DNA of 64,000 nt, from the IMG/VR virus record IMGVR_UViG_3300020473_000011, positions 1-64,000 of that record; one strand, written 5' to 3'. The position numbers and the translations under genes were made by a program. The notes below the pieces were generated by a model. The model did not search any database, was not told where the DNA came from, and worked only from the letters and a program-made list of their open reading frames with translations. Each line of letters starts with the position of its first letter. Positions within the stretch are counted from its first letter, which is position 1. Shown piece after piece: positions 32,989 to 62,570 of the stretch.

Positions 32989-33049
32989 GCTGCACTGCAA
33001 CCACTTATAGAAAATAATCGTTGTACAACGATATTGTTATTGCTATACT
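32989..33049 (+). promoter_or_regulatory. Regulon promoter module
   Basis: CTGCACTGCAA box, perfect ATCGTTGTACAACGAT, TTGTAC-17-TATACT. Confidence 0.75.
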
Positions 33050-33082
33050 CAATGCGTACTAAGAAAAACCGATTGAGACTAT

Positions 33083-33340
33083 GTGATGACCACCCTTACG
33101 ACCGATGAATTGTTAGCCCGTTTTAGAATCCAACCAGCGCCTATTAAGAATGACGAAGGTGATGCAATAACACTAGCCGAGTTCCTAGCTGAACAAGCCC
33201 TAAAGAAAGAGCTTGCCCGTGAGGAAATGAAACGCCGTGTTAAGGCTGCTCGTGCTGCAAAAGCTCCCGTGCGTGCCCGTGTAGCTTTCATTAAAGCTAG
33301 GCTACAAATTGCTGAAATGCGTAAACAAAAGGCTGCATAA
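33083..33340 (+). CDS. Small basic helical protein
   Basis: ORF directly after the promoter module. Confidence 0.65.
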   Translation: MMTTLTTDELLARFRIQPAPIKNDEGDAITLAEFLAEQALKKELAREEMKRRVKAARAAKAPVRARVAFIKARLQIAEMRKQKAA

Positions 33341-33345
33341 TTCTA

Positions 33346-33933
33346 ATGTCCGATACTCAATCTAACGATTATTTAAGTACCCCTGTTAGCTGGCCATTGC
33401 TCTACCGCATGGTCAGTGTCTTTGAGCAGCATAAAGCCCGCATCATTATTGATAGGCCACGGGAGCTAAATGCCAGCGGTCGTGAGATAACGAACTCCCG
33501 CAGCTACCGTCGTTCAGGTGGTCGTACGACATACAAAGCAACCATGTTACCAGATGACATCTACCGAGCTTGGAACTACTTCACCTGTAATGCGAAGAAA
33601 ATAAACCAGTTCCTTTACCGCAATGGTGCTGTAAATGCTGCGAAAGCCGTATTTGTATTTATGAATGTTAAGCTCAATTCGAAGGATCGTGCTGCCCGCG
33701 CGCGTGCTAAGCGTGAGAGTCTTTTTAAGGGACGTTACTATGGCTCTTTCGTAACGGAGATCATCACTAAAACTCTTGAGTCTAAGTTGGGATCCCGATT
33801 CGATGTGCTTATTGAGCACACGCCAGATCGCTATCTATTCGAGGTTATTGGCCACGCGAGTGCACGCGCGGTAATGCACGACCTGAAAGAACCGCTAGCG
33901 CTCAAGACACTAGCAGTGCAGTTTATCAAGTAA
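33346..33933 (+). CDS. Hypothetical basic protein
   Basis: 195-aa ORF. Confidence 0.65.
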   Translation: MSDTQSNDYLSTPVSWPLLYRMVSVFEQHKARIIIDRPRELNASGREITNSRSYRRSGGRTTYKATMLPDDIYRAWNYFTCNAKKINQFLYRNGAVNAAKAVFVFMNVKLNSKDRAARARAKRESLFKGRYYGSFVTEIITKTLESKLGSRFDVLIEHTPDRYLFEVIGHASARAVMHDLKEPLALKTLAVQFIK

Positions 33934-33935
33934 CC

Positions 33936-34604
33936 TTAGTTGCAGTCGGCGCAGCCCCAGTTGTTAAACGGATTCTCGACTAGCTCCGCATTGTAATAAC
34001 GGCGGTCTTGTGTCACCTTTTTGGTAAGGCCGTCAATTAATGGGAAGTCAGTGTCTTCCGTCTCGATTTCAGCAAGGCATAAGCCTTCATTTTTGTCTAA
34101 GAAAATATCAATTTCCCACAGGTAGCCCGAGTACTCAAACAAGTGACGGACTTTACTAATCCGTGCTGTAAGCGTCTCGTATATGGCCTCAGCGGACGTG
34201 ATTGGTATTGATGTTTCGTATTCTCTTCGGCTCGCGCCTGCTATGCGTTCTTTAAAGCAGAAGATTGCCTCAGCTTCGTCGATAATACGAATGCGAAGTG
34301 CCCACGAGGATGAGTCTACTTTGAAAAGTGCTTGTTCCTGACAGACCAAATCAACGCCGTCACAGGCCATCATTTCTTTGACATCTTTGGGGTCAATTGG
34401 GAAGGCAGTACTTGATGTATTTATACGACTCTTAACGAGTACAAAGCCCTGACCGTTCTTGTCTAACCCAAGCAGGACATCCCAGTCAGACTGCTCATTG
34501 ATGTAGGCTTGGCTTAATGTGTGACGCTCTTTGCAGTGCTCGCGGTACTTTTCATTGAATATGTTTACATCCATTACAAATTTTTCTTCGGTCTCTATGG
34601 CCAT
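33936..34604 (-). CDS. CYTH domain protein
   Basis: IETEEKF (ExExK), LRIRI, EYE, WEIDIF..NEGL..AEIE. Confidence 0.9.
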   Translation of the reverse strand: MAIETEEKFVMDVNIFNEKYREHCKERHTLSQAYINEQSDWDVLLGLDKNGQGFVLVKSRINTSSTAFPIDPKDVKEMMACDGVDLVCQEQALFKVDSSSWALRIRIIDEAEAIFCFKERIAGASRREYETSIPITSAEAIYETLTARISKVRHLFEYSGYLWEIDIFLDKNEGLCLAEIETEDTDFPLIDGLTKKVTQDRRYYNAELVENPFNNWGCADCN

Positions 34605-34728
34605 TAGTCACCCTCGTCTGGTAGTACTTAATATCTGTGTATCTTGGTTTCCTAGCGACTATGCACCAATGAGGTTGCCTTAGCAATAGGTATGCTGTGC
34701 AGGCTGACCTGCATATCTTTTCAAAAGT

Positions 34729-34789
34729 GCTGCACCGTAAGGCTTTACATTAAATATCGTTGTACAATGATGTGCTTTGTTGTTATAGT
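34729..34789 (+). promoter_or_regulatory. Regulon promoter module
   Basis: CTGCACCGTAA box, ATCGTTGTACAATGAT, TTGTAC-18-TATAGT. Confidence 0.7.
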
Positions 34790-34822
34790 AGGCTCACTAA
34801 CCGATACAAATGAGACCCGATA

Positions 34823-35125
34823 ATGACCCAAGCTAAAAATACCAACTTTATATGGAAGCCTGCTCGAATCTTTACGCAGTTGCCAACCGAAGGCTTTGTA
34901 CACGTCATCTTGTCAGACGACAAAACCGAGTTATGCTGTGATGTGGTCGAGCTTGACGAAAAGCGTGGTGAACTTGAGGTACTAATGTTTGCTGCCGTTG
35001 ACGCGGCCTACCAAGCCGAGTTCTTACAAGGTCAGCACCGTGCAATTGATGACGAATACCGCTTTACAGTGCAGCTGCTAAAAGAAATCGAAGACGACGA
35101 AAAAGCGGCAGCAAAAAAGGCTTAA
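34823..35125 (+). CDS. Hypothetical protein
   Basis: ORF after the promoter module. Confidence 0.65.
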   Translation: MTQAKNTNFIWKPARIFTQLPTEGFVHVILSDDKTELCCDVVELDEKRGELEVLMFAAVDAAYQAEFLQGQHRAIDDEYRFTVQLLKEIEDDEKAAAKKA

Positions 35126-35203
35126 TTGGTTTATACTCTCGTTCAAATTGATGACTAAGCCCGCGCGAAGAACGCAGGTGTAGAAAAAATAATTGGAGTA
35201 CCC

Positions 35204-36094
35204 ATGCAAATTGATAACTTTGGAAGTTCGTGTGAGCTTTTCGAGCATTATGCTTTATTAGCTGGTGATAGCAGTCTTGATGTAGAAGCTATGGCCAGAC
35301 AACATGCACACATGGTGGGCTTTCAAAGCCTTGAAGAGTATGTCACATATCTCGATAGCGCTGAGAATCAAGTACCTCAATTGACTTTTGCTTTTGCTGG
35401 CCGAGAAATCGCAGACATTACTGTGGAGCTTACAAATGTAAAGGGCGACATAACACGAGATCCACATTCGTTTGACGTTGACCTTAATGAGGCTGTTAGC
35501 TTCTGTTTAACCTCATCACGCTGGGGCGGCACTAAGCTAGCCTTTAAGACGCTTGATGTAGTCCAAGCGCTGATACCATACCTGAGTGACGCACACTACG
35601 AGTTACACCCTCAGCTACTGGCCGACCGCGAAAAGTGGACGGGCGCAGCCCTGTTCTTCGATGCAAGCTTTAAAAATGTTATCGCTGAGCACAACTCACC
35701 TAATTTTGCTTTCACGGTCACTCATTGGTTAGGAAGTAGTGCCGACTTGGCCTTCCCTGAAAGTACAAACCCAGTACAACAAATGGTTGACTTCTCAGAC
35801 CAACTACTAGGTAATGCAGCTGCTCATGCCCTTGAGGTTATGATGGGCTACCTGCGCAATAACGATCAGGTGAAGATCCATACAGCAGACGACTTGCGCC
35901 GTGAACTGATGGCTAGTCTAACTGATAGTAATATACAGCGAATTGCAGTATCGACTATTTCGGGTTTATACCTGAGCTTCTTATCAGTACCTATGACCGA
36001 TGATGAAGCCGAGGCTATGGTACAAACGGCTCTGAAAGAAGAAAAACCAAAACTAAGCTTAGTACATTCGTCGGACAGTACGGTTCGTCATTAA
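35204..36094 (+). CDS. Hypothetical protein
   Basis: 296-aa ORF with GGAG SD. Confidence 0.7.
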   Translation: MQIDNFGSSCELFEHYALLAGDSSLDVEAMARQHAHMVGFQSLEEYVTYLDSAENQVPQLTFAFAGREIADITVELTNVKGDITRDPHSFDVDLNEAVSFCLTSSRWGGTKLAFKTLDVVQALIPYLSDAHYELHPQLLADREKWTGAALFFDASFKNVIAEHNSPNFAFTVTHWLGSSADLAFPESTNPVQQMVDFSDQLLGNAAAHALEVMMGYLRNNDQVKIHTADDLRRELMASLTDSNIQRIAVSTISGLYLSFLSVPMTDDEAEAMVQTALKEEKPKLSLVHSSDSTVRH

Positions 36095-36141
36095 TCAACG
36101 CAAAGGGCATCATGTTATGCCCTAACTAAAAGAAGGCATCT

Positions 36142-36692: not shown

Positions 36693-36705
36693 AAGACGTT
36701 CCTAT

Positions 36706-36730
36706 AAAAAAGGCTACCCATTGGTAGCCT
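36706..36730 (-). terminator. Intrinsic terminator after the Ser/Cys peptide genes
   Basis: AGGCTACC-loop-GGTAGCCT followed by a T-run on the minus strand. Confidence 0.75.
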
Positions 36731-36755
36731 AAAGTATTAACTTTTGGTCAGCAGT

Positions 36756-37763: not shown

Positions 37764-38288
37764 ATGAATTATCGAGTAAATACGGATTCTGCGCGCCCTC
37801 AGCCCTTTCCACCCCATGGTAGGATTTCTGTAGAGGTTCACGGTACCAATAATGACCTAATCCATGTCAAATGCTTCGGCGCTTTCAATAAAGAAACAAT
37901 GCTAGCCTTAGTCGACATACAACAGCGCTATCGTGATTTATTGTGCCCCAAACGCTACGTGATCGTAGAGTTCATAGACACATGTTTAGCGCTGCCTGAG
38001 TTTTTTGCTGAGGCCACACGTCATCATAAAGAATTGGTTTCCCGTGGCCAGTCCTCAAAGGCCGTTGCTTATGTTATGCGCAAAGGTATCGAGGGTAAGT
38101 CCATGATGAAAGGCTTTTACTTGGGGGTCTATAAAGACGCTGGGATCCCAGTAGTCGTTACTGAGACCGTAGACGAAGCCCGCCAGTGGCTTAAAGAAAA
38201 AGGGCTGGGATCAGCCCAAACTAATGAGAATTGGAGCACACTCGCGGAATCGAACCGCGCTCATGCTGCTTTGCAGGCAGCCACCTAA
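37764..38288 (+). CDS. STAS/SEC14-like hypothetical protein
   Basis: Small alpha/beta pattern ending TVDEARQWL; 3' end overlaps tRNA-Cys antisense. Confidence 0.55.
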   Translation: MNYRVNTDSARPQPFPPHGRISVEVHGTNNDLIHVKCFGAFNKETMLALVDIQQRYRDLLCPKRYVIVEFIDTCLALPEFFAEATRHHKELVSRGQSSKAVAYVMRKGIEGKSMMKGFYLGVYKDAGIPVVVTETVDEARQWLKEKGLGSAQTNENWSTLAESNRAHAALQAAT

Positions 38289-38306
38289 CCACTCAGACAA
38301 GTGTGC
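38232..38306 (-). tRNA. tRNA-Cys(GCA)
   Basis: GCACACT/AGTGTGC acceptor, GCTGC-CT GCA AA-GCAGC anticodon arm, U73, encoded CCA. Confidence 0.95.
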
Positions 38307-38325
38307 GTTGTACAATGAATTAAGT

Positions 38326-38401
38326 TGGCAGGGGCTATAGGACTTGAACCTACAACCTTCGGAGTTGGAAACCGCTGCTCTCCCAATTGAGCTAAGCCCC
38401 T
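38326..38401 (-). tRNA. tRNA-Trp(CCA)
   Basis: AGGGGCT/AGCCCCT acceptor, G73, CCA; anticodon arm GCGGT-TT CCA AC-TCCGA. Confidence 0.93.
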
Positions 38402-38412
38402 GCAATGAAAAG

Positions 38413-38496
38413 TGGTACGGGTAGCGAGGATCGAACTCGCAAGGACATACCGACAGAATTTAAACCTGCTGCGTTTACCAGTTTCGCCATACCCGT
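38413..38496 (-). tRNA. tRNA-Leu(TAA)
   Basis: ACGGGTA/TACCCGT acceptor, A73, long variable region, GCAGG-TT TAA AT-TCTGT. Confidence 0.92.
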
Positions 38497-38502
38497 ATTG
38501 TT

Positions 38503-38590
38503 TGGTGGATAGCCTTGGACTCGAACCAAGAAGCCCTTTAAGGGAGCGGGGTTACAGCCCGCGACGCTACCAATTACGCTCTAACTATCC
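38503..38590 (-). tRNA. tRNA-Tyr(GTA) copy 2
   Basis: GGATAGT/GCTATCC acceptor, GCGGG-CT GTA AC-CCCGC, long variable arm, CCA. Confidence 0.92.
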
Positions 38591-38599
38591 AATAATGTT

Positions 38600-38677
38600 T
38601 GGTGGACACTGGCCAGATTCGAACTGCCGACACTCGGAACTTCAACCCGATGCTCTAACCAACTGAGCTAAGTGTCC
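38600..38677 (-). tRNA. tRNA-Phe(GAA)
   Basis: GGACACT/AGTGTCC acceptor, TCGGG-TT GAA GT-TCCGA, CCA; one extra G in the T-stem. Confidence 0.9.
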
Positions 38678-38687
38678 ACACTAAAAG

Positions 38688-38776
38688 TGGTGGATGAGGT
38701 AAGACTCGAACTTACAAAACCCTAAAGGGCAACGGGGTTACAGCCCGCGACGCTACCAATTACGTGTTACTCATCC
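38688..38776 (-). tRNA. tRNA-Tyr(GTA) copy 1
   Basis: GGATGAG/CTCATCC acceptor, GCGGG-CT GTA AC-CCCGT, long variable arm, CCA. Confidence 0.92.
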
Positions 38777-38790: not shown

Positions 38791-39009
38791 CTACTCTACG
38801 TTGAGGCGTTCACCGTTCGGTAGTACAAGGGATAGCTCCACATGCCCACCAAGTGCCTCGACGTAAGCTGCCAGTTTAGTCACAGACAACTGTTTAATTT
38901 CCTTGCCTTCAAGTTTGCTGACACTTGAATCGCTAACCCGCATTTGAGCGGCAATGACCTCTTGCTTTACTTTTAGCTCTTTTCTGAGGTCTTTTAGATT
39001 AGGTTGCAT
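38791..39009 (-). CDS. XRE-family HTH protein (HigA-antitoxin-like)
   Basis: LKDLRKEL..KQEVIA..M.VSDSSVSKLE...LAAYVEALGGHVEL. Confidence 0.85.
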   Translation of the reverse strand: MQPNLKDLRKELKVKQEVIAAQMRVSDSSVSKLEGKEIKQLSVTKLAAYVEALGGHVELSLVLPNGERLNVE

Positions 39010-39141: not shown

Positions 39142-39142
39142 A

Positions 39143-41422: not shown

Positions 41423-41440
41423 TAGATTTGGACTAATCAC

Positions 41441-41502
41441 CTGTGCCGCAGCATATTTCATTAAAAAAAATCATTGTACAATGATTTTTAACCTGATAAA
41501 GT
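41441..41502 (+). promoter_or_regulatory. Regulon promoter module
   Basis: CTGTGCCGCAG box, perfect 24-bp palindrome AAAAATCATTGTACAATGATTTTT, TTGTAC-17-TAAAGT. Confidence 0.75.
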
Positions 41503-41545
41503 ACACGCAACTAACCGATACACCGTTTTGATTAAGGACGTGACT

Positions 41546-42278: not shown

Positions 42279-42704
42279 ATGACGACAGTAAGACAAAAAG
42301 AACTTGGGGTGCTCGGTGGGATTGCCATTTTTTCGCTGGGGATGTTTCTAGGGCACTACTTAACCCAGAGTGCGGGAGAACCCGCAAGTCAGCCTGATAT
42401 AACAACACTAGCGCCTGATAGGTTGTCAAAAGCTCCACCACGTACTGAGGTGTTTCTCAATGACGATGGTATTGAGTGCATAAGAGACACACTCACGGGG
42501 GCACTCTCGTGTAACTTCGTAAAATACGAGGAAGCCATTAAGGCTTGCGAGGAAGAACAGCTAGCCAAGAACACGTTTGTCGGTGATGGGGGTAAAGAAA
42601 TCACCTTCCCTCTACTTGAAGGCGAGTGTGAGGCTAAGGTTAAAATAGAGGCAGTAGAAGCCCATAGACTAGCGGAAGAACGTGCTCGGATAGTATGGCA
42701 CTAG
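42279..42704 (+). CDS. Membrane-anchored hypothetical protein
   Basis: N-terminal TM. Confidence 0.65.
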   Translation: MTTVRQKELGVLGGIAIFSLGMFLGHYLTQSAGEPASQPDITTLAPDRLSKAPPRTEVFLNDDGIECIRDTLTGALSCNFVKYEEAIKACEEEQLAKNTFVGDGGKEITFPLLEGECEAKVKIEAVEAHRLAEERARIVWH

Positions 42705-42713
42705 CTAAAAGCA

Positions 42714-42773
42714 CTGCACCGCAGCACTTTACATTAAAAAATCATTGTACAACGATTTTGGCTGTGCTACATT
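42714..42773 (+). promoter_or_regulatory. Regulon promoter module
   Basis: CTGCACCGCAG box, ATCATTGTACAACGAT, TTGTAC-17-TACATT. Confidence 0.75.
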
Positions 42774-42814
42774 ACGTACATAGAATATTTCTTACCGATA
42801 CTAAAGAGACCGAT

Positions 42815-43495
42815 ATGTACGTTAACAAACAACTTGAGACACAACTAAAGCACTTTGACGATTTCACTCAGCTAATGAAAGACATGGGCATGGAGTGCGC
42901 ACGTTCGGCAGTGGATTCGGTAGATGAAGTATTTTCACAACTACGTAAAGCTATTGTCACTAAAAAGGACGGCGATGTTCGTTACGCGGACTTTAAACAC
43001 CCTAATGCAGAGGTGTGGCTACAAATCGAGGCTGAGACACCTCTTTACAGCATTGACCCAACTAAGGTTCGCATCCTTGTATCAACGTCGCAATACAGCC
43101 ATGGTACGCGTGAGAACCCATTCCGCCCACTAGGTAAAGTATCAACACTCAAAAAACGTATTGATGACCTAGTGGAAAGTCTTTCAAAGGATGCCGAACG
43201 CGAAGCACGCGCCCAGCGTTTCATGGACGTAAATACAAGCATCGCAGAGAATATGGCGCTGGACTTAACAGGCGAAAAGGCCGAGGTTCGCGAGGAAAAG
43301 GGCTATCAAAGCATCACGCTAAACTATCGAGCTGTTAGCGTAAAGGTTGGCTTGTCTATGTTCCTTAATGAGGGCGATGCAACTAAAGTGTCTTTATCAT
43401 TGGGCTTTAATTCAAAGACTACGCATAAGACGCTAACGCTAAAAGAATGGGTACGTACAGTGGATCAATTCTACGCAATGGGATTACTGGGATAA
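42815..43495 (+). CDS. Hypothetical protein, paralog of 41546-42271
   Basis: Start after the promoter module; the track start at 42695 runs through the promoter. Confidence 0.75.
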   Translation: MYVNKQLETQLKHFDDFTQLMKDMGMECARSAVDSVDEVFSQLRKAIVTKKDGDVRYADFKHPNAEVWLQIEAETPLYSIDPTKVRILVSTSQYSHGTRENPFRPLGKVSTLKKRIDDLVESLSKDAEREARAQRFMDVNTSIAENMALDLTGEKAEVREEKGYQSITLNYRAVSVKVGLSMFLNEGDATKVSLSLGFNSKTTHKTLTLKEWVRTVDQFYAMGLLG

Positions 43496-43963: not shown

Positions 43964-44135
43964 TGGCCGCTAACGGGTGGGCATTATTCATGTCATTGAA
44001 AGTATTGGCAATGGCGTGATTACCCAATATGGCGTGAGATATATCTCACGTGATGTAGGTCTTTAGCGTAGGAAAAGGCATACTAGAGTGCTAAGTGATT
44101 GCTTACAAAGCAATAACTATTCAGCTCGTATTCAG

Positions 44136-44196
44136 TTGCAGCGCAGAAGTTTTTATCAATTAAATCGTTGTACAATAAATTGATAGCTGTTATATT
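44136..44196 (+). promoter_or_regulatory. Regulon promoter module
   Basis: TTGCAGCGCAG box, ATCGTTGTACAATAAAT, TTGTAC-17-TATATT. Confidence 0.7.
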
Positions 44197-44727: not shown

Positions 44728-44806
44728 GAGCTGCGAGCACTTATTTAAGACTTAGCCGCTAGTGCAGCGAACTCGCGGCCTTGTGAGTCTTAAAACTTGA
44801 AAAGCG

Positions 44807-44878
44807 TTACCCCGCAGCACTTTACATTGATAATTTTTATCAAAAAGTGTTGTACAATGATTTTTTGACTGCTATAGT
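44807..44878 (+). promoter_or_regulatory. Regulon promoter module
   Basis: TTACCCCGCAG box, GTGTTGTACAATGAT, TTGTAC-17-TATAGT. Confidence 0.7.
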
Positions 44879-44918
44879 CTGACCCAACTAACCAATTAAT
44901 AAAAATGAGACTTGACCG

Positions 44919-47040: not shown

Positions 47041-47080
47041 TCTTCTCTTAGGCTTTTTGCCGTGATACACTGCGGCGCAA

Positions 47081-52594: not shown

Positions 52595-52656
52595 AATATA
52601 GCGCAGCCACTGCTAGTTGTACAACACTTTTTTGAGTGAAAGTCGCTGTATTGTAA
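52595..52656 (-). promoter_or_regulatory. Regulon promoter module (minus strand)
   Basis: TTACAATACAG box, GTGTTGTACAAC, TTGTAC-18-TATATT. Confidence 0.65.
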
Positions 52657-52776
52657 GGGATTTTGAAAGTATGCACCATTGGGTTCTTGGTATGCCCAGA
52701 CTTCATTGTACAAAGAAAAAAACCGCCAAGATGATCGGCGGTTTTGGTCGTTCTATATAGAGTTTCATGAAAACAA

Positions 52777-53417: not shown

Positions 53418-55451
53418 TTAGAATGTAACTTTAACTACGCGGTTAAATGAACCGCTAACTTTAACTAGTAACGCGTTGCGCTGCGTTGATGAAAAACCAA
53501 GACCGCTTAGCTGGTCATCTGTAGGGTCGGCCTTCAACTTAGAACCGAGTGCTTCAAATACCTTGCGGTGTTTGTTCAGTTCAGGTGCTAAGTTTTCGTT
53601 GTAGAATCCACGGATCTTGTCAGGTGACTGGCAGCCCTCTAGCATGAAGAAGAAGTGCTTATTACCAGTCTCTTCACCGTCCCAGTGGTTCGGTGAGTTC
53701 ATTACCATTGATACTTTTGACCATTGATGTGTGTTAACACCCCACTCTTGGCGTGAAGCCTCTGACCCTTTGATTGAGCTGATGATCTTGACGCCCTCAC
53801 TGTGCGAGTAGTCGAACTCAAGCACTATGATACTGCGGCCGTTTTGTAGTGCGTCTTTGTGTTCAAACTTAATGGTATTCCCGAAGTACTCAAATTCTAA
53901 AACAAAGCCAAAATCAATACGTTCACGTTGACGGAAGTTCTTCACCCGTACGCGATGGCGACCCTCTTGCATACGTGAACGGTCGGCATAGGCAATGTTT
54001 TCAACGGGTGTGCGTGAGTCGACACCCGTCGCGTTCATATCAATATCAAGGAACCCACCTGTGCGATAGCTTTTCTTGGAAGTAAAGTCGATCACATTAC
54101 CGTCAGGCTCTTCCATGCTAAGGTCTAAGTCGTCGCCATTGAACCATGCTAGAGAACTACGCACGTCCGCGTTGACATTACCGCCTGCGGCCTTAACCAA
54201 CTGGGTAATAGAAGCGTCGGCCAACTCGCCATTATAGCTCCAAGAGAAGTTGTTAGGCCACTTCAACATATTAGGCGCATCAGGGTACACAGGCGCAACA
54301 AGGCTGACCAGATTCGGCACATGTCGGTTTTCCATCATGACTTCAAGACTAGTGGCCTTTGGTAGCACATCTGCTACGAAGTCCTCAATGCTAATCTCTT
54401 CGACCTTATCGAACTTTTGCTTATTGTTGGCCTTTGTAGGCGCGAGAAGGTCAAGCGCATTACCCTTCATTTTCTTTTGAGCATCACGGTCGGCGAAGAG
54501 CACGTTATTCACTGTGATGTCTTCTAACCGAGCTGGGCGGCGGTAAAGCGAGTCTTCGAAGCCAAGCTGTATGATGGTCTCATTCGCTTCATCGATCTGC
54601 TTTTGTGTGATAAGGGCAGTTGGGCGCTTATAGTTCTCAGGCGCAACCTTCGCTTCATAAGATTTTACGGCATCTTCTAGGTCGCTGCCTTCGGAAAGGT
54701 CTGATAAGAGCGTCCCCATAGAAGTGTTGCGAAAACGGCCACTGTTACCAAGTTCTACAGACTTTTCCCAGAAAAACAGTTGTTCTTTTAGTGGGTCATC
54801 TAGTTTTTCTATGCGAGCGAACTCAGTTTTAACCTTAACGAGCGTGTCAACGATATGCTTGAACTCTTCACCGCGATACAAGGATCCCTGTGCAATTAGG
54901 TCACTTACTAACTCACACGAATAAAGGTCTACCTCACGTACGGAGCGCTCTAGTACCATTTTGTTAGCACGGGTGTCTGAAAGGTATGAGCCAGCCTCGG
55001 CATTTACAAACTTGTTAGGTAGGTCAAAATAGAAGTGTTCCCACTTCTTCTGTTCACCATTGGCCATAGGCTCAAAGTTGTGAGAAGTGCCCACGCGGGT
55101 TTCCCAGTGACGATACACATTCTGGATAGAGTCGCTATGTTGGCGTACGAAAAGGGAAAGTGCGTCAGCTACGGCCTGACGGAAGTCACTAAGCTCAATA
55201 TCCCACACTGTAACTAGTTTGCCATCAATGATAGCAATAACATTACCAATATTTCGGATGAAGTTGCGGCAGCAAGCGCAATCGTGTTCAGTACGTTCGC
55301 GATAAAGAGGGTTGGTGCCTTTAGGGAAGCTTGAAAGATATTCGTTGTACAACTCGTCTTTATTTAACTCGACGGTGTATAGCTCAGTGCTGTTTTCGGT
55401 CATATACGCTAACTGCGCATTAACAGCGTCACGCATGGCATTAAAGCTCAT
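53418..55451 (-). CDS. Large phage-type conserved protein (HxCxxC motif; DLDL/LDIDMN/PVENI domain)
   Basis: EHDCACCRNFI, WPNNFSWSYNG, DDLDL, LDIDMN, PVENI. Confidence 0.8.
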   Translation of the reverse strand: MSFNAMRDAVNAQLAYMTENSTELYTVELNKDELYNEYLSSFPKGTNPLYRERTEHDCACCRNFIRNIGNVIAIIDGKLVTVWDIELSDFRQAVADALSLFVRQHSDSIQNVYRHWETRVGTSHNFEPMANGEQKKWEHFYFDLPNKFVNAEAGSYLSDTRANKMVLERSVREVDLYSCELVSDLIAQGSLYRGEEFKHIVDTLVKVKTEFARIEKLDDPLKEQLFFWEKSVELGNSGRFRNTSMGTLLSDLSEGSDLEDAVKSYEAKVAPENYKRPTALITQKQIDEANETIIQLGFEDSLYRRPARLEDITVNNVLFADRDAQKKMKGNALDLLAPTKANNKQKFDKVEEISIEDFVADVLPKATSLEVMMENRHVPNLVSLVAPVYPDAPNMLKWPNNFSWSYNGELADASITQLVKAAGGNVNADVRSSLAWFNGDDLDLSMEEPDGNVIDFTSKKSYRTGGFLDIDMNATGVDSRTPVENIAYADRSRMQEGRHRVRVKNFRQRERIDFGFVLEFEYFGNTIKFEHKDALQNGRSIIVLEFDYSHSEGVKIISSIKGSEASRQEWGVNTHQWSKVSMVMNSPNHWDGEETGNKHFFFMLEGCQSPDKIRGFYNENLAPELNKHRKVFEALGSKLKADPTDDQLSGLGFSSTQRNALLVKVSGSFNRVVKVTF

Positions 55452-56401: not shown

Positions 56402-56679
56402 TGTCGTTTCCTTCTCTTCGGTTCGTTTAAGTATTCATTGTAAACGGCTGCATTGCAAGCGTTTACGTTTGATAGTGCTACTATAGCAGGTTGAATGTGA
56501 AACGCAACATCGTTGTACAATGATTTTCAAAAAAGTGAAGCTAATTCATTAGATTCAATGAATGGTTGTGCCGCAAGGGACACTCTGGTAATTTACGTCG
56601 GCCATAAAAGGCTGCACCCCAATGGTGTGAGCCGCATAACTGAGACGCTGACAACTGACACTAACGTGGAGACATCACT

Positions 56680-58789: not shown

Positions 58790-59635
58790 TCAGCTGTTGG
58801 CCACAACTTTCTTTGCAGCGGTGACAAGCCAATCATAATGGTCGGTGCCTACAGGAACTGCATCAGCTGAGCTACCCGATTGCACCTTATCGTAGAAGGC
58901 CAAGGCTTCTTTTAGCTCATCAATATCACCACGTTTTTGCGTAAACTCCCCCGTCTCTGTATTAAAGCGGATCTGATGCTTACTGAGGGCACGAGCCGCA
59001 TCAGTATAGCAGGCTGCATAGCATTCGCTTTCCGACGTATCGCGGTCGTAATGCTCTGGGTCGACACCTGTCGCCTCTGACAGCGTAGAAACCATTTGGT
59101 CGAGACAGTCACGATAATAGTCGGCCTCGTCAGTCGGGTTGGACAGGTGGTTTATGACCTTTAGCTCAGCGTCTATGGCTTCTTGGCCTTTAGGCACGCA
59201 ACAGCCATCATGGTGAACAATACACTGGTCTGAAAGCGCATCTTGTGTCGCCCCGCAGAAATCGCAACAGCGCCAGCCACCAACTAGCGTTGTATAAGGC
59301 ACGCTATCTACGGTTGGCTCATCGACTGACCCAAAGGTAAGGCCATGGGCTTTCATTTGGTTTAGGATGTCTAATGATTGCTTTAAAAGAGCTACAGTGT
59401 CTTCACAGCAAAAAGAGACAACCCGTTCCTTTGCAGCTTCTGCATCAGCGAAAGAACCTATGTGCTCCGTCCCAATAGTGGCCTGCCAAGAACAATCGCC
59501 TTTGCCTGAGACATAGAAGACTCGTGCCTTCATACCTAATACGGGTATATCTGCTGAATAGCTGGGAAGGTCAGCCTTCGTCTCTGTTTGCGCCCAATTT
59601 AAGATTAAGCCCGAGGCTGTGTTAATGCTTGTCAT
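58790..59635 (-). CDS. Hypothetical protein
   Basis: 281-aa ORF with CDFC..H..C motif. Confidence 0.65.
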   Translation of the reverse strand: MTSINTASGLILNWAQTETKADLPSYSADIPVLGMKARVFYVSGKGDCSWQATIGTEHIGSFADAEAAKERVVSFCCEDTVALLKQSLDILNQMKAHGLTFGSVDEPTVDSVPYTTLVGGWRCCDFCGATQDALSDQCIVHHDGCCVPKGQEAIDAELKVINHLSNPTDEADYYRDCLDQMVSTLSEATGVDPEHYDRDTSESECYAACYTDAARALSKHQIRFNTETGEFTQKRGDIDELKEALAFYDKVQSGSSADAVPVGTDHYDWLVTAAKKVVANS

Positions 59636-59636
59636 A

Positions 59637-60122
59637 TTAGTCCTCGCCCAATGGGCAGTTTATGTGTTTGTTACCGTATAGGATCGCGACACCACAACCG
59701 CAGCGTTTTACGTGACTGCCCACGGTCATACTTTCTAGCTGTACTGTGCTACGCGGACGACTAGGCGCGCGGTACCTTTCTTCCAAGTGTTGCCCACCCT
59801 GTTTTAGCAGCTCAATGTCATCTAAGCTCGATAGTCTGCGTCGTGTCTCGAAAGCTGAGTTAGTAAGATTCTGTTCTGAAATGGCTTTACATGAAGGCTC
59901 TACATGGGTTTGGCCATGGAAACCGTGCTGTGTTGCAGCGCTTAGGAAGCTCTGAGTCTTCGCTATCGCGCCCGAAAAGTCATACTTAGTAAAAGGCTGA
60001 TCCGTATGACGGTTCACGGCCTCAAGTAACACCCCATGAGGGATGGGAAGACCTAGACTAATCATCATCTTTCGCCTTAATCCAGTTGTACTCATTAGGC
60101 GGGTATGCCTCAAGGGCTTCAA
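59637..60122 (-). CDS. Hypothetical protein (start probably near 60068)
   Basis: Coupled ORF in the minus-strand operon. Confidence 0.5.
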   Translation of the reverse strand: MKPLRHTRLMSTTGLRRKMMISLGLPIPHGVLLEAVNRHTDQPFTKYDFSGAIAKTQSFLSAATQHGFHGQTHVEPSCKAISEQNLTNSAFETRRRLSSLDDIELLKQGGQHLEERYRAPSRPRSTVQLESMTVGSHVKRCGCGVAILYGNKHINCPLGED

Positions 60123-60273
60123 GCAAAGTTCGCTTATTTTCGTCCCATATACCGCTCGGCCAGAATTGGAAGAGTGTCACTAGTCCATCTTTATCACGCC
60201 ATGCGTAACAATCGAATACGATGTCAGTCTTAGCGGTGCTCGGTAGCTTGTCATTGTTGGCCACGCCTGTCAT
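60058..60273 (-). CDS. Hypothetical protein
   Basis: Coupled ORF. Confidence 0.55.
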   Translation of the reverse strand: MTGVANNDKLPSTAKTDIVFDCYAWRDKDGLVTLFQFWPSGIWDENKRTLLEALEAYPPNEYNWIKAKDDD

Positions 60274-60648
60274 TTATTCTTTGCCTCTCGTAGTTTCTTT
60301 GCATTTTAATTCGGTTTTAGCAGTGCCATCATGCGTAGACTCATCACTTAGCTTTTCTAGGATGTCCCACTCGCTTTCAAAGACAGAGGCCAAGCCCGAT
60401 TCGTGCCAAATACGATAGCCCCGAAATGAGACTTTGCCCCTAAATACGCGCTCGACACAGCCTTTGCAGTTGAAGCGGGTCACATTCTTGTCCCCATGAG
60501 GCTCTACCGTATCGATCTGTGCACGCTTACCGTTACGCATCAGATAGATTCCAACGCTGTCGATAATCACGGGCTTTGTGTTCATAGGCGTAATTGCACT
60601 ATCATTCATGGTATCTATTTCCTTTTGGCTTGTTAGCTTGTTAGGCAC
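60274..60648 (-). CDS. Hypothetical protein
   Basis: GIYLMRNGKRAQI...WDIL phage-like pattern. Confidence 0.6.
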   Translation of the reverse strand: MPNKLTSQKEIDTMNDSAITPMNTKPVIIDSVGIYLMRNGKRAQIDTVEPHGDKNVTRFNCKGCVERVFRGKVSFRGYRIWHESGLASVFESEWDILEKLSDESTHDGTAKTELKCKETTRGKE

Positions 60649-60690
60649 AAAGGCCGTATAAATCTAGATAAGCTACTGCGTACCAGCGCA

Positions 60691-61722
60691 TTATACAAAC
60701 TCTACGGCGGATTGTAAGTCTTTGAACCCACGGTCGTCATAGCGGCGCGTCGTATCAACATTGGAATGGCCAAGTAGCTTAGCCACCTCAAAAATGTCAC
60801 GGCCATTAAGAAGTAATCTAGTCGCAAAGTAATGACGAAGAGCATGCGGGTGCAGCCCCGTTACATTGTCGGCCTCGCCAGCTTTACGGATAACGTTGTA
60901 GACCCCAGTCGTTGATAGTCCATTGTCTAAAACTTTATCGACGATGTTTACCTTGCGGAATAAAGGGGCTGACCGCTTTTTATTGTTCGTTGTAAGCACG
61001 ACCCGTGCCCAGTCCATTAGGGCTTTATGTAGCTCGCTATTCATAGGAACGTCACGAAGCTTCGCTCCCTTACCCAATACACTGATAAACGACTCTTTAT
61101 GACCACTCTTAGAAAAACGGATGTCTTGTAGGCGCAGGTTGGCCACTTCTTCGCGGCGTAGGCCAGCATGTGACATGCACATGAAAATCGCGCGGTTTCT
61201 CACGCTGATGTTTTTAAGGGTGCCAATACTACCGATAACTTGATTAACAGTAGCCGCAGGAAGCGCCCCTAAGTCGCGCTCAGACGTTAAGTTGCTAAGA
61301 TTGTCTAGTTGCCCTTCTAACCACGTTAAATCGACCTCATCGTTGCTAGCGTTCGATTTAGCCTGCTTCTTTGCATTACTCTTAACGGATTTGATGGCAT
61401 GCTTAATCTTTTCGTAGGCTGTCTCGGTAAGCTTGTCTGAGATAAGTGCCCAGTTAAGTGTTTTTCGAACGATAGTTAGAACAGTGTTTATATAGCTTGT
61501 AGACTTACCCTCTTCGACTAGTGCAGTTCTCAGGTCTGAGTATTCTTGGATGGTCAACGCGTGCCACTCGAAACTAAGGACAGACTCATTATTGTCAGCC
61601 TTTGCTGCGTGAGGTGTGCGCTTTAGCGCAGCGCGTAAGTTCTTTACTACAGCGCCCTTTGAAGCGTCTGAGGTAAGGCTCGCGAGATATAGGTCAATAT
61701 AAGCTTGCATAGTCGGTCTCAA
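60691..61722 (-). CDS. Xer-like tyrosine recombinase
   Basis: GLRREE, GKGAK, HPHALRHYFAT, LLGHSNVDTTRRY. Confidence 0.93.
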   Translation of the reverse strand: MRPTMQAYIDLYLASLTSDASKGAVVKNLRAALKRTPHAAKADNNESVLSFEWHALTIQEYSDLRTALVEEGKSTSYINTVLTIVRKTLNWALISDKLTETAYEKIKHAIKSVKSNAKKQAKSNASNDEVDLTWLEGQLDNLSNLTSERDLGALPAATVNQVIGSIGTLKNISVRNRAIFMCMSHAGLRREEVANLRLQDIRFSKSGHKESFISVLGKGAKLRDVPMNSELHKALMDWARVVLTTNNKKRSAPLFRKVNIVDKVLDNGLSTTGVYNVIRKAGEADNVTGLHPHALRHYFATRLLLNGRDIFEVAKLLGHSNVDTTRRYDDRGFKDLQSAVEFV

Positions 61723-61772
61723 CTTATCAGTGTATCGGTTCTATTCCGCTGCATGGCAGCGGTTTATGACGA

Positions 61773-61802
61773 TACTATAAGCTATCATTGTACAATGATC
61801 AA
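61773..61802 (-). promoter_or_regulatory. Recombinase promoter with the operator in the spacer
   Basis: TTGATC-17 bp-TATAGT overlapping perfect ATCATTGTACAATGAT (61784-61799). Confidence 0.7.
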
Positions 61803-61805
61803 GAC

Positions 61806-62120
61806 CTATTTACGAATTAGTGTACAACTCTCAACCTTGCAGCTAATAACATATTCTTCATGGAAGTCGAACTCAACCTCGCGCAGGAAGTCTTCTTGGT
61901 CAAGGTGTGAGTCAACTTCGGCAATTAGATAGATCTCACCTTGACCGTCATTGCTGTGCACATCAACGTCGTATAGGTCAGCGTCACTAAGGTGAGGCGG
62001 CGTTGTACCCTTCTCATATAGCTCTAGTTCATCTTGCAGCACTGAAACAACGCGGTCAGGGCACATTACTTCTAGGCGTGTTGCTAGCTTTAGCAGCACG
62101 CGAAAACGATTGTTATTCAT
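61806..62120 (-). CDS. Acidic hypothetical protein
   Basis: 104-aa ORF. Confidence 0.55.
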   Translation of the reverse strand: MNNNRFRVLLKLATRLEVMCPDRVVSVLQDELELYEKGTTPPHLSDADLYDVDVHSNDGQGEIYLIAEVDSHLDQEDFLREVEFDFHEEYVISCKVESCTLIRK

Positions 62121-62146
62121 CAGTAGTCTCTCTTATTTTAAAATTC

Positions 62147-62392
62147 TTATTTTTCTTCAACCCAAGGGTGCGTTACGCCATACTCAACTGACATTTTCTG
62201 TTTAAATACAGTATCAGGCTTCGCCAAGGCAATTTCATTCTCTTCAAAGCGGTCATCGCGTACAGAGAAGTACTTGTCGAATAATCGTTTTGGAATGCGC
62301 ATTGCGGCCATGGCTTTAGGCTTGCTTGTTGCTGCCACCATGAAATTATTCACGCCGTCTTTGCTTCCATAGAATACTTTTAGCTTTGCCAT
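62147..62392 (-). CDS. Hypothetical protein
   Basis: Start MAKLKVF after AAGGGA SD. Confidence 0.6.
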   Translation of the reverse strand: MAKLKVFYGSKDGVNNFMVAATSKPKAMAAMRIPKRLFDKYFSVRDDRFEENEIALAKPDTVFKQKMSVEYGVTHPWVEEK

Positions 62393-62510
62393 GAGGCTGT
62401 TCCCTTTAGTTGGTATTGTCTGTAAAAGGCTGCGGGGCAACCGACTTGGCACAAATTTATAGAATCGTTGTACAACCGTCAAGTTTTATTTATGTTTTAA
62501 ATGAAAGTAG

Positions 62511-62570
62511 CTGCGCCGCAACGCTTTTCATTCAAAAAGTGTTGTACAACGATGTGAGTGATGCTATAGT
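62511..62570 (+). promoter_or_regulatory. Regulon promoter module
   Basis: CTGCGCCGCAA box, GTGTTGTACAACGAT, TTGTAC-17-TATAGT. Confidence 0.75.

What the first reader, a model, noticed from the sequence alone, without database searches (positions are those of the whole stretch)
32989..62521. Second quasi-palindromic box (YTGCRNYGCAR) phased about 31 bp upstream of the TTGTACAA -35
Seen, with start-to-start distance to TTGTACAA: CTGCACTGCAA 32990 (31 bp), CTGCACCGTAA 34730 (30), CTGTGCCGCAG 41441 (33), CTGCACCGCAG 42714 (31), TTGCAGCGCAG 44136 (32), CTGCGCCGCAA 62511 (31), TTACAATACAG 52656 on the minus strand (32), TTACCCCGCAG 44807 (43). Related copies occur at 11718, 18264, 22662, 56448 and 61749. 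The centre falls near -61, or about one helical turn further. Established: these are class I activator positions. Inference: a two-input module (activator plus repressor) copied in front of many genes.
Basis: partly seen in the sequence, partly recalled or inferred. Interest (0 to 1): 0.6.

Follow-up and report, generated by a model that had tools for sequence, protein, structure and literature searches.

The report
Dyad box upstream of phage promoters
A short GC-rich palindrome really is repeated at a fixed distance upstream of many early promoters of an uncultured 281-kb marine phage; it looks like the docking site of a second, still unidentified regulator, not a terminator, which makes this phage's promoter cassettes a two-switch system that can now be tested.

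Summary
The window is the first 64 kb of a 281.6-kb marine jumbo-phage record. YTGCRNYGCAR occurs 11 times in the window (1.75 expected) and 31 times genome-wide, 24 of them intergenic. Boxes with at most one mismatch lie 30-34 bp from TTGTACAA 11 times (0.9 expected).

The box is the core of a 23-bp dyad, AA-N4-CTGC-N3-GCAG-N4-TT. It is tied to the -10/-35, not to TTGTACAA. I curated 29 promoters in three classes:
- Class A: box centre about -61, TTGTACAA at -32.
- Class B: box centre about -61, a true TTGCAA -35, TTGTACAA in the spacer at -21.5.
- Class C: the box itself supplies the -35 (centre -30), TTGTACAA upstream.
- Two to three promoters have the box centred at -72/-73.

The flanks do not covary as a hairpin. 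Predicted stems are weak, and canonical terminators lie beside some boxes.

The best reading is a DNA site for a dimeric regulator, kept on one helix face relative to RNA polymerase. Its sign depends on position. "Class I activator" is only a positional fit. The closest known cassettes are the T4-type PeSLs. No diverged relative or raw RNA reads were available, so function is inferred. A related iteron, TGCAGTCGTCTTTT, forms five arrays elsewhere in the genome.

The parts
32984..33049 (+). Class A cassette: dyad box CTGCACTGCAA 32990-33000, AT-rich tract, TTGTACAA 33021-33028 (start-to-start 31), TG-extended -10 TATACT 33044-33049. Box centre -61.
   Evidence: A canonical terminator at 32912-32931 lies just upstream.
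34724..34789 (+). Class A cassette: box CTGCACCGTAA 34730-34740 (1 mismatch), TTGTACAA 34760-34767 (30), TG-extended -10 TATAGT 34784-34789, then leader ACTAACCGATAC. Box centre -61. Divergent intergenic region.
   Evidence: A terminator-like hairpin at 34696-34715 lies upstream.
41435..41520 (+). Class A cassette: box CTGTGCCGCAG 41441-41451 (1 mismatch), TTGTACAA 41474-41481 (33), -10 TAAAGT 41497-41502, leader AACTAACCGATA from 41509. Box centre -63.
   Evidence: Metatranscriptome contigs of two runs of one sample begin at 41509. Other samples' DNA contigs carry a 2-nt deletion at 41463 that brings the spacing to 31.
42708..42773 (+). Class A cassette: box CTGCACCGCAG 42714-42724, TTGTACAA 42745-42752 (31), TG-extended -10 TACATT 42768-42773. 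A second candidate, TTGGCT-N17-TAGAAT, lies at 42758-42786. Box centre -61 relative to TACATT.
   Evidence: RNA contigs span this box without a break (42687-42980).
44130..44196 (+). Class A cassette: box TTGCAGCGCAG 44136-44146, TTGTACAA 44168-44175 (32), TG-extended -10 TATATT 44191-44196. Box centre -62. Divergent intergenic region.
44801..44878 (+). Class A cassette, one helical turn further: degenerate box TTACCCCGCAG 44807-44817 (2 mismatches) followed by cacTTTACA, TTGTACAA 44850-44857 (43), TG-extended -10 TATAGT 44873-44878. Box centre -73.
52595..52662 (-). Class A cassette on the minus strand: degenerate box TTACAATACAG (52646-52656, 2 mismatches), TTGTACAA 52617-52624 (32), -10 TATATT 52595-52600. 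Box centre about -63.
62505..62570 (+). Class A cassette: box CTGCGCCGCAA 62511-62521, TTGTACAA 62542-62549 (31), TG-extended -10 TATAGT 62565-62570. Box centre -61. Divergent region: a second TTGTACAA (62468-62475) faces the other way.
63976..63986 (+). Box CTGCGGCGTAG (1 mismatch) of a class A cassette. Its TTGTACAA (genome 64006, 30 bp) and -10 TATAGT (genome 64029) lie just beyond the window end.
31211..31262 (+). Class C cassette: TTGTACAA 31211-31218, then box TTGCGCCACAA 31234-31244, whose TTGCGC acts as the -35 hexamer, N17, -10 TATACT 31257-31262. Box centre -30.
11718..11728 (.). Related copy CTGCAATGCAG (AT-rich centre). It lies about 14 nt downstream of a TAACCGA leader motif, so it is in a transcribed leader, not at -61.
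18264..18274 (.). Related copy CTGCAATGCAG inside a longer inverted repeat (CCTAAT...ATTAGG), 45 bp downstream of the TTGTACAA at 18219.
22662..22672 (.). Related copy TTGCATTGCAG, with no TTGTACAA nearby, upstream of a TATACA...ACTAACCGAT promoter-like stretch (box centre about -50).
56448..56458 (.). Related copy CTGCATTGCAA inside a longer palindrome (GTAAACG...CGTTTAC; predicted RNA hairpin -9.7 kcal/mol). Divergent region, 65 bp from the TTGTACAA at 56513.
61749..61759 (-). Related copy CTGCCATGCAG (minus strand) within a strong 7-bp-stem hairpin CCGCTGC/GCAGCGG (-12.9 kcal/mol). It lies directly downstream of TTGTACAA-N8-TATAGT, so it is at the 5' end of a transcript.
22110..22120 (.). 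Exact pattern match TTGCAGCGCAA, intergenic, with no TTGTACAA or clear promoter register.
47070..47080 (.). Exact pattern match CTGCGGCGCAA immediately before an ORF start. No T-run follows and no TTGTACAA is in register.
5685..5695 (.). Exact pattern match CTGCGATGCAG inside a coding region. Probably a chance occurrence.

Best explanation
The box is the core of a 23-bp dyad, AA-N4-(C/T)TGC-RNY-GCA(G/A)-N4-TT. This dyad is the 5'-most module of roughly 100-bp sigma-70-type early-promoter cassettes in an uncultured marine jumbo phage.

Each cassette runs in this order:
- dyad box
- AT-rich, UP-like tract
- -35 hexamer or TTGTACAA operator
- -10 (TATAGT or TATACT)
- conserved leader ACTAACCGATA
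- GAGAC
- ATG of a small ORFan

The box most likely acts at the DNA level, as the binding site of a dimeric, sequence-specific regulator. That regulator is probably phage-encoded; the genome has four Xre-type HTH genes.

The site is kept on one face of the helix relative to host RNA polymerase. Its centre lies at -61 +/- 2 in about 18 promoters, at -72/-73 in 2-3 promoters, and at -30 in 7 promoters. These registers are about three and about one helical turn apart.

Its position does not depend on where the TTGTACAA operator sits. The operator's centre is at -31.5, at -21.5, or at about -44. The two palindromes are therefore two separate inputs.

At -30 the box supplies the promoter's TTG and overlaps the sigma region-4 contact. 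A bound protein there must repress, or must replace the -35 contact. At -61/-72 it sits where a protein can touch the alpha C-terminal domain (activation), or where it could act as an auxiliary operator.

Shown: the motif, its extent, its registers, and the lack of hairpin covariation. Inferred: protein binding, and its sign.
For: Sequence-specific conservation with random neighbours. In 25 promoter-oriented copies, T1, G2, C8 and A9 of the box and the TT at +15/+16 are 92-100% conserved. AA at -6/-5 is present in 20 of 25. Positions -4 to -1, +11 to +13 and everything further out are unconserved. This argues for selection on the motif, not for recent duplication of whole cassettes.

No base-pairing constraint:
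- The outer pair Y0/R10 is statistically independent (CG 23, TG 11, CA 12, TA 5).
- One-mismatch variants break the stem as often as they keep a wobble pair.
- Flank pairs are unpaired in 11-15 of 27 sequences. Overall 73.7% of cells are paired against 70.6% in shuffles.
- The median predicted RNA hairpin is about -3.8 kcal/mol.

Registers. The box start lies 53-57 bp upstream of strict -10 hexamers in 13 cases and 23-24 bp upstream in 5 cases, regardless of where TTGTACAA sits. Curated centres are -60 to -64, -72/-73 and -29/-30.

Class C. All seven boxes begin with TTGC, giving a TTG at -35. Most class A and B boxes begin with CTGC.

Not needed as a terminator. Boxes occur in divergent intergenic regions, where nothing needs terminating (34730, 44136, 62511). 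They also occur next to canonical terminators (32912-32931 and 34696-34715).

Other points:
- The promoter call is supported by metatranscriptome contigs that start at 41509, 7 nt after the -10.
- Candidate regulators exist.
- No Rfam family matches.
Against: - No binding protein has been identified and there are no expression data with strand or 5'/3' ends. Only assembled contigs were available.
- No diverged relative carries the early region. The one relative found shares TTGTACAA but not the box, so conservation could not be tested.
- The A-run / T-run flanks, and about 10 of 46 copies with extended stems (-8 kcal/mol or stronger), are also what a bidirectional terminator would show.
- Flank complementarity is slightly above the partner-shuffle control (4.37 against 3.99 pairs of 8, p = 0.006).
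- The spacing spreads over 5 bp (30-34), which is looser than for strict face-of-helix activators.
- The promoters look strong without any activator.
Confidence: 0.5

Rival explanations
1. PeSL-like stem-loop. The box is the apex of a small RNA/DNA hairpin followed by a T-run. It attenuates or terminates transcription coming from the upstream ORFan and insulates each early-promoter cassette, as in T4-type 'promoter-early stem-loop' elements.
For: - The overall layout matches PeSLs: a stem-loop just 5' of an AT-rich tract, a sigma-70-type promoter, a ribosome-binding region and the ATG of an ORFan (PMC2839356, PMC4122927).
- Downstream genes have no family hits.
- The box is always followed by N3-TTTT and often preceded by an A-run.
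- About 10 of 46 copies fold at -8 kcal/mol or stronger, for example genome positions 111325, 257854, 269419 and window 61749.
- Flank complementarity is slightly above control.
Against: - The conserved stem is only 4 bp with a 3-nt loop.
- The three nucleotides between the stem and the T-run pair in only 39-52% of copies, against 35-43% expected.
- Class A copies fold at 0 to -4 kcal/mol.
- The terminator scan does not call any box, yet it finds canonical terminators next to two of them.
- There are no compensatory changes.
- Copies occur in divergent regions.
- RNA contigs run through box 42714.
- A terminator would have no reason to keep a fixed register to the -10, or to double as a -35.
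Confidence: 0.17
2. The box is the site of a class I transcription activator that recruits RNA polymerase through the alpha C-terminal domain, while TTGTACAA binds a repressor.
For: - Centres at -60 to -64 and -72/-73 are the classical class I positions (established knowledge for CRP-type activators and for P2 Ogr-type phage activators at about -55).
- Class A promoters lack a canonical -35.
Against: - Class A promoters have an extended -10 and a UP-like tract.
- Class B promoters have a near-consensus -35.
- The same box at -30 in class C cannot act by a class I mechanism.
- No activator gene has been identified, and MotA/AsiA-type families were not found (those searches had no positive control).
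Confidence: 0.2
3. No regulatory role of its own. The box is a conserved linker that marks cassette boundaries and serves as a recombination hotspot for shuffling ORFans, or it is a remnant carried along with duplicated promoters.
For: - It always sits at the 5' edge of the cassette, about 10 nt after the upstream stop codon.
- PeSLs are proposed recombination linkers.
- The downstream genes are ORFans.
Against: - Sequence between the modules is not conserved, so the copies are not recent duplicates.
- An 11-23-bp motif is short for homologous recombination.
- The use of the box as a -35 in class C, and the fixed registers, point to a function in transcription.
- No second genome was available to show shuffling.
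Confidence: 0.08

Closest known systems
PeSL (promoter-early stem-loop) cassettes of T4-type phages (Arbiol et al. 2010, PMC2839356; Comeau et al. 2014, PMC4122927)
   Same: - About 100-bp repeated intergenic cassettes in front of small ORFans.
- A conserved dyad element at the 5' edge, an AT-rich tract, a sigma-70-type -35/-10, and a translation-start region.
- Many copies per genome, and consensus sequences specific to each phage lineage.
   Different: - PeSL stem-loops are stable (for example A3-4G3-loop-C3T3-4) and are experimentally effective terminators. Here the conserved stem is 4 bp and the flanks do not covary.
- Here a second palindrome (TTGTACAA) is built into the promoter in three registers.
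- Here the box can itself be the -35.
- This phage is not T4-like.
Position-dependent phage regulators: phi29 p4 (dyad with A/T-tract flanks; activates A3 from -82 while repressing A2b by overlapping its -35), and lambda CI at OR2. From my own knowledge, not tested here.
   Same: One dimer-type site is used at an upstream, RNAP-contacting position on some promoters and at a -35-overlapping position on others. The site has a dyad with A/T tracts about one turn from its centre.
   Different: The recognition sequence and the protein families are unrelated or unknown. Here there are dozens of copies spread over a 281-kb genome, not a single switch region.
P2/P4 Ogr/Delta-dependent late promoters (TGT-N12-ACA dyad centred near -55) and CRP class I sites (-61.5, -72.5). 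From my own knowledge.
   Same: A dyad upstream element at a fixed register about 55-62 bp upstream of the start, repeated before several operons. Alternative positions lie one helical turn away.
   Different: - Those promoters have poor core elements and depend on the activator. These have an extended -10, a UP-like tract or a good -35.
- No zinc-finger or CRP-like activator was identified.
- A -30 register does not occur in those systems.
Global plasmid regulators that bind both repeat arrays and promoter operators: omega of pSM19035 (heptads in direct and inverted orientation), KorB of IncP-1, and RepA/RepE iteron-plus-inverted-repeat operators. From my own knowledge.
   Same: The half-site GCAG-TCG-TTTT of the class B boxes recurs as a direct-repeat iteron, TGCAGTCGT(C)TTTT, in five arrays (21 copies). 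This is the same logic of direct repeats in one place and inverted repeats at promoters.
   Different: - Only the class B boxes and one class A box share the TCG extension.
- The base before GCAG is T in the iterons but mostly C in the boxes.
- No Rep, ParB or RHH gene was detected.

Membership tests
Class I activator binding site (CRP-type) | Dyad site centred near -61.5, or at further integral helical turns (-72, -82...) | tested here: met
   Centres are -60 to -64 in about 18 of 22 class A and B promoters and -72/-73 in 2-3 of them. The spread is +/-2 bp, and there is one outlier at -57.
Class I activator binding site (CRP-type) | The target promoter is weak without the activator (defective core elements) | tested here: inconclusive
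   Class A lacks a canonical -35 but has TG-extended -10 hexamers in 10-11 of 14 promoters and a UP-like tract. Class B has a TTGCAA/TTGACA -35 with TATACT. Promoter strength was not measured.
Class I activator binding site (CRP-type) | All functional sites lie upstream of the -35 region | tested here: not met
   Seven promoters carry the same box centred at -29/-30, where it forms the -35 hexamer.
Class I activator binding site (CRP-type) | An activator protein that contacts the RNAP alpha C-terminal domain | not testable with these tools
   Only candidate HTH_3 genes were found.
Intrinsic (Rho-independent) terminator | A GC-rich stem of at least 5 bp immediately followed by a U-tract | tested here: not met
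   The conserved stem is 4 bp with a 3-nt loop. Three mostly unpaired nucleotides precede the T-run. The median MFE is about -3.8 kcal/mol. The terminator scan calls none of the boxes. A minority (about 10 of 46) do have longer stems.
Intrinsic (Rho-independent) terminator | Stem maintained by compensatory changes | tested here: not met
   The Y0/R10 combinations are independent. There is no excess of double changes (5 pairs against 5.3 in shuffles).
PeSL cassette (T4-type phages) | A repeated sigma-70-type early promoter with an AT-rich upstream tract in front of ORFans | tested here: met
   29 curated cassettes. Downstream genes have no Pfam or PHROG function. RNA contigs are consistent with one predicted start.
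PeSL cassette (T4-type phages) | A stable stem-loop acting as terminator just upstream of the promoter | tested here: not met
   See the terminator rows. RNA contigs span box 42714 without a break.
PeSL cassette (T4-type phages) | Cassettes mediate gene shuffling between related genomes | not tested
   No relative with the early region was found.
T4 MotA-box middle promoter (considered for class C) | An activator box centred at -30 that replaces the -35, with a sigma-70 -10 | tested here: met
   Class C boxes are centred at -29/-30, with TATAGT or TACACT 17 bp after the TTGCGC.
T4 MotA-box middle promoter (considered for class C) | A MotA box consensus (TGCTT) and MotA/AsiA homologues | tested here: not met
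   The sequence is a GC-rich dyad, not TGCTT. PF09114 and PF09010 gave no hit, but those searches had no positive control and the record is about 67% complete.
Iteron / inverted-repeat operator pair (Rep- or omega-type) | The same half-site occurs as direct repeats in arrays and as inverted repeats at promoters | tested here: inconclusive
   GCAGTCG(T/A)TTTT is shared by 21 iterons and about 8 boxes. GCAG-N3-TTTT is the preferred spacing, with 24 of 34 occurrences intergenic. The other boxes lack the TCG and mostly have C, not T, before GCAG.

The most novel reading that the evidence does not exclude
The box is the inverted-repeat (dimer) form of the 14-15-bp iteron TGCAGTCGT(C)TTTT. That iteron forms five direct-repeat arrays at about 84.5, 86.6, 87.5, 128.3 and 128.9 kb.

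One phage protein would then bind the arrays (an origin-, partition- or switch-like locus next to an Xre-type repressor gene) and also about 30-45 promoter boxes. This would couple a replication or segregation or immunity locus to genome-wide control of early ORFan promoters in a jumbo phage. It would be an omega/KorB-like global circuit in a virus, working beside a second global operator (TTGTACAA, 149 copies).
Probability: 0.15. Interest if true: 0.75.

Novelty: new variant of a known kind. Interest (0 to 1): 0.45.

Why it matters
Jumbo phages from the ocean are almost entirely uncharacterised at the level of gene regulation. This genome shows an unusually legible regulatory grammar. Two unrelated palindromes, a UP-like tract, an extended -10, a conserved leader and a pre-ATG motif are combined in three promoter architectures.

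The second box moves with RNA polymerase's reference frame. The first box, TTGTACAA, moves independently of it. If the box binds a regulator, the same protein is predicted to have opposite effects on different promoter classes. That would give a compact explanation of temporal switching among dozens of ORFan genes.

It also shows that PeSL-like cassette organisation exists outside T4-type phages, but with the 'stem-loop' slot occupied by what looks like a protein operator. The predictions can be tested directly with short reporter constructs.

Tried and rejected
1. Canonical terminator. Rejected on stem length, lack of covariation, weak folding, and the presence of true terminators next to boxes.
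2. Tandem upstream promoter, with the box as the -35 of a second promoter in class A. There is no consistent -10 at +21 to +24; the AT tract fits a UP element better (inspection).
3. Sigma-54 -24/-12 reading of GGTGCA...CTGC. The spacing is off by one and there is no GG upstream of most boxes (inspection).
4. N4-type hairpin promoter or a phage RNA polymerase. There were no PF00940 or sigma70_r2 hits. RNA contig ends do not sit downstream of boxes.
5. Known RNA family. None beyond the tRNAs.
6. Comparative test. None of the following gave a diverged relative with the early region:
   - pattern scans of viral contigs;
   - a pattern scan of metagenome contigs (the only hit is the same record, 100% identical);
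   - protein-based searches;
   - blastn against phages and plasmids.
   The one relative (L073/G001) shares only structural genes and TTGTACAA.
7. Literature search for TTGTACAA in phages. Nothing relevant.
8. The 120-aa gene flanked by iteron pairs. No family and no informative Atlas match.
9. Read laying gave assembled contigs only, so starts, ends and strand cannot be proven.

Not used: the large protein search, an alternative genetic code, complex prediction.

Full report
**What the sequence is.** The window is bases 1-64000 of a single 281,557-bp virus record (47.7% GC).
- It encodes virion structural proteins, a cluster of six tRNAs and mostly ORFans.
- Near-identical DNA occurs in marine and seawater metagenomes from several studies and in two metatranscriptome runs of one sample.
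- blastn finds nothing similar among deposited phages or plasmids.
- It is therefore an uncultured marine jumbo phage. CheckV-type completeness is given as 67%.

**The observation.**
- TTGTACAA occurs 37 times in the window (1.7 expected) and 149 times in the genome. It is the commonest 8-mer there, and 104 of the 149 copies are intergenic.
Of these, 24 of 31 lie in the 15.8% of the genome that is intergenic.
- CTGC-N3-GCAG is the most frequent 4-N3-4 dyad of the genome.
- All listed copies and distances were verified.
- Boxes with at most one mismatch lie 30-34 bp from a TTGTACAA 7 times in the window (0.26 expected) and 11 times genome-wide (0.87 expected).
- There are further peaks at 41-43 bp (8 against 0.52) and at 12-18 bp (7 against 1.2). 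All hold when only intergenic DNA is considered.

**Anatomy.** I aligned 25-27 copies in promoter orientation.
- The box is the core of a longer dyad: AA at -6/-5 (20 of 25), four unconserved bases, CTGC, three bases (mostly G/C), GCAG, three unconserved bases, then TTTT. The TT at +15/+16 is present in 25 of 25.
- Positions between and beyond these are essentially random. The copies are therefore not recent duplicates of a whole cassette.
- The cassette continues with an AT-rich tract resembling a UP element, the -35 region, and a -10 of the form TATAGT or TATACT.
- Six to seven nucleotides further on comes a conserved leader ACTAACCGATA. A GAGAC motif often lies shortly before the ATG.
- Metatranscriptome contigs from two runs of one sample begin exactly at 41509. 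This is the first A of AACTAACCGATA, 7 nt after the TAAAGT hexamer. Contigs cannot prove a 5' end, so this is supportive only.

**Three architectures.**
- Class A (14 promoters, 9 of them in or at the edge of the window). The box is followed by 19-23 AT-rich bp, then TTGTACAA occupying the -35 position, N15-16, then the -10. The box centre is at -60 to -64, or -73 at 44807. The TTGTACAA centre is at -31.5. Ten or eleven of the 14 carry an extended -10 TG.
- Class B (8 promoters, 111-133 kb). The box is followed by about 21 bp, a true TTGCAA/TTGACA -35, then TTGTACAA inside the spacer (centre -21.5), then the -10. The box is 41 bp from TTGTACAA but keeps its 32 bp to the -35. Its centre is at -61 to -63 in six promoters, with one at -57 and one at -72. 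None has an extended -10.
- Class C (7 promoters, one at 31211-31262). TTGTACAA is followed by 4-15 bp, then a box that always begins with TTGC and serves as the -35 hexamer, then N16-17 and the -10. The box centre is at -29/-30.
- Check without curation. Using strict intergenic -10 hexamers only (n=119), the box start lies at -53 to -57 from the -10 in 13 cases and at -23/-24 in 5 cases. TTGTACAA peaks separately at -23/-24 (11 cases) and at -13 (6 cases).
- Conclusion. The box is referenced to RNA polymerase's frame, not to TTGTACAA. Its registers (-30, -61, -72) differ by about three and about one helical turn.

**Hairpin or protein site?** The A-run/T-run flanks invite a terminator reading, so I tested it.
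- The outer pair of the box is statistically independent: CG 23, TG 11, CA 12, TA 5.
- The four flank pairs between the stem and the T-run are unpaired in 11-15 of 27 sequences. Overall pairing is 73.7% against 70.6% in shuffles, with no excess of compensatory pairs.
- Predicted RNA hairpins have a median near -3.8 kcal/mol. Class A copies fold at 0 to -4 kcal/mol. About 10 of 46 copies reach -8 kcal/mol or stronger.
- The set is only slightly more self-complementary than a partner-shuffled control (-4.75 against -3.91 +/- 0.25 kcal/mol).
- The terminator scan calls no box, but it finds canonical terminators directly upstream of boxes 32990 and 34730.
- Boxes occur in divergent intergenic regions.
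- RNA contigs run across box 42714.
- No Rfam family matches.
- Verdict. A canonical terminator is rejected. A weak attenuator role for the minority with longer stems remains possible.

**Mechanism.** The best-supported reading is a DNA-level site for a dimeric regulator held on one helical face relative to RNA polymerase.
- In class C the box provides the TTG that sigma region 4 reads. All seven class C boxes start with T, whereas most class A and B boxes start with C. A bound protein there must compete with the -35 contact or replace it.
However, those promoters already have strong core features, so activation is not required by the sequence.
- The mutual spacing of the two palindromes varies (31, 41, or -12 to -23 bp). 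They are two independent inputs, not one rigid module.
- Candidate regulators are four Xre-type HTH genes.
- No sigma factor, RHH, MotA, AsiA or T7-type polymerase family was detected. Several of those searches had no positive control.

**An unexpected relative of the box.**
- The 7-mer GCAGTCG is strongly intergenic (34 of 66 copies). It belongs to a 14-15-bp iteron, (R)TGCAGTCGT(C)TTTT.
- The iteron is present as 21 direct repeats in five arrays, all in one orientation: 84.54-84.61, 86.55-86.78, 87.51-87.61, 128.28-128.44 and 128.88-128.90 kb.
- One array lies beside an Xre-type repressor gene. Two arrays flank a 120-aa ORFan.
- The promoter-proximal half of all class B boxes and of one class A box reads GCAGTCG(T/A)TTTT, which is the same word.
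- GCAG-N3-TTTT is the preferred spacing genome-wide.
- This suggests, but does not show, that the box is an inverted pair of the iteron half-site.

**Comparison with known systems.**
- In layout the cassettes are closest to the PeSLs of T4-type phages: a stem-loop, an AT tract, an early promoter, then an ORFan (PMC2839356, PMC4122927). They fail the defining feature of a stable, terminating stem-loop.
- In logic they resemble position-dependent phage regulators (phi29 p4, lambda CI) and upstream-dyad activators (P2 Ogr, CRP class I). Those resemblances are from my own knowledge and were not tested.

**Limits.**
- The only relative found is a 127.6-kb fragment with 61% protein identity in a structural gene. 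It keeps TTGTACAA (62 copies against 6 for the control word), but as TATTGTACAATA. It shares only structural genes and shows no box enrichment or spacing.
- Pattern scans of viral and metagenome collections found no other carrier.
- Function therefore rests on within-genome statistics.

**Verdict.** This is a new variant of a known kind of phage promoter cassette and is of moderate interest.

Noticed in passing
L002:530-620, L002:2545-2795, L002:3505-3625, L004:4275-4450, L004:4875-4910 (genome 84.5, 86.6, 87.5, 128.3 and 128.9 kb): There are five arrays, 21 copies in all, of a direct-repeat iteron (R)TGCAGTCGT(C)TTTT. All copies are in one orientation and often occur as tandem pairs 15-17 bp apart. 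One array lies next to a 124-aa Xre-type HTH gene (84015-84389, minus strand). Two arrays flank a 120-aa ORFan (128448-128810). This looks like an origin, a partition site or a multi-operator switch.
   Followed up: partly
window 41509-41520, 34796-34807, 44887-44896 and about 20 other promoters genome-wide: A conserved leader, ACTAACCGATA(C), begins 6-7 nt after the -10 hexamer. RNA contigs of two runs start at its first A (41509). Its function is unknown. It could be an initial transcribed sequence, a 5'-UTR signal, or a further operator.
   Followed up: partly
genome-wide; e.g. window 33068-33073, 34812-34816, 44907-44911: GAGAC (often TGAGAC) is 12.7-fold enriched in the 22 nt before predicted start codons (70 occurrences, about 17% of genes). 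That is comparable with AGGAG-type Shine-Dalgarno words, but GAGAC is not complementary to the usual anti-SD sequence.
   Followed up: partly
window 3829, 19126, 37655, 58210 and about 48 more genome-wide: A further repeated word, CAATGGTGC(R), has 52 copies, 25 of them intergenic. It often lies 30-45 nt upstream of GAGAC...ATG in the structural-gene half of the genome. It may be a separate (late?) promoter element.
   Followed up: no
genome 80-160 kb (L001-L005): The E. coli-type Chi octamer GCTGGTGG occurs 72 times (35 forward, 37 reverse; about 9 expected). Of these, 58 are concentrated between 80 and 160 kb.
   Followed up: no
window 41463: DNA contigs from two other samples carry a 2-nt deletion in the A-run between box 41441 and its TTGTACAA. 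This changes the outlying 33-bp spacing to the modal 31 bp.
   Followed up: no
class A versus class B promoters (e.g. window 33041-33049 versus genome 117872): Promoters in which TTGTACAA occupies the -35 position almost always have an extended -10 TG (10-11 of 14). Promoters with a true TTGCAA/TTGACA -35 never do (0 of 8). This suggests that TTGTACAA is an operator that displaced the -35, not a -35 element itself.
   Followed up: yes
L073, L078-L084 (IMGVR_UViG_2885280279_000001, 127.6 kb): A related phage fragment keeps TTGTACAA (62 copies against 6 for the control word). Its flanks differ (TATTGTACAATA instead of ATCGTTGTACAACGAT), and it has no CTGC-N3-GCAG box enrichment.
   Followed up: yes
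window 38232-38776 (minus strand) and 38842-38997: There is a cluster of six tRNA genes (Cys, Trp, Leu, Tyr, Phe, Tyr), with a TTGTACAA (38308) between tRNA-Cys and tRNA-Trp. An 81-aa Xre-type HTH ORF lies immediately beside the cluster.
   Followed up: no
window 6553-8454 (+): A 633-aa ORF has a weak tyrosine-recombinase (Phage_integrase) C-terminal match, just below the Pfam cut-off. Together with four Xre-type HTH genes, this raises the question of a temperate or plasmid-like lifestyle.
   Followed up: no
L009:6609-15935 (minus strand): A 3,108-aa ORF has no Pfam or PHROG match. It is 30% identical over 1,319 residues to a gene of the related fragment.
   Followed up: no
window 53418-55451 (minus strand): A 677-aa protein of PHROG 1735 (function unknown) is about 50% identical to proteins of several hundred Salmonella, Klebsiella and other myoviruses. 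A few records label those proteins 'DNA-directed RNA polymerase', but there is no Pfam support here.
   Followed up: no
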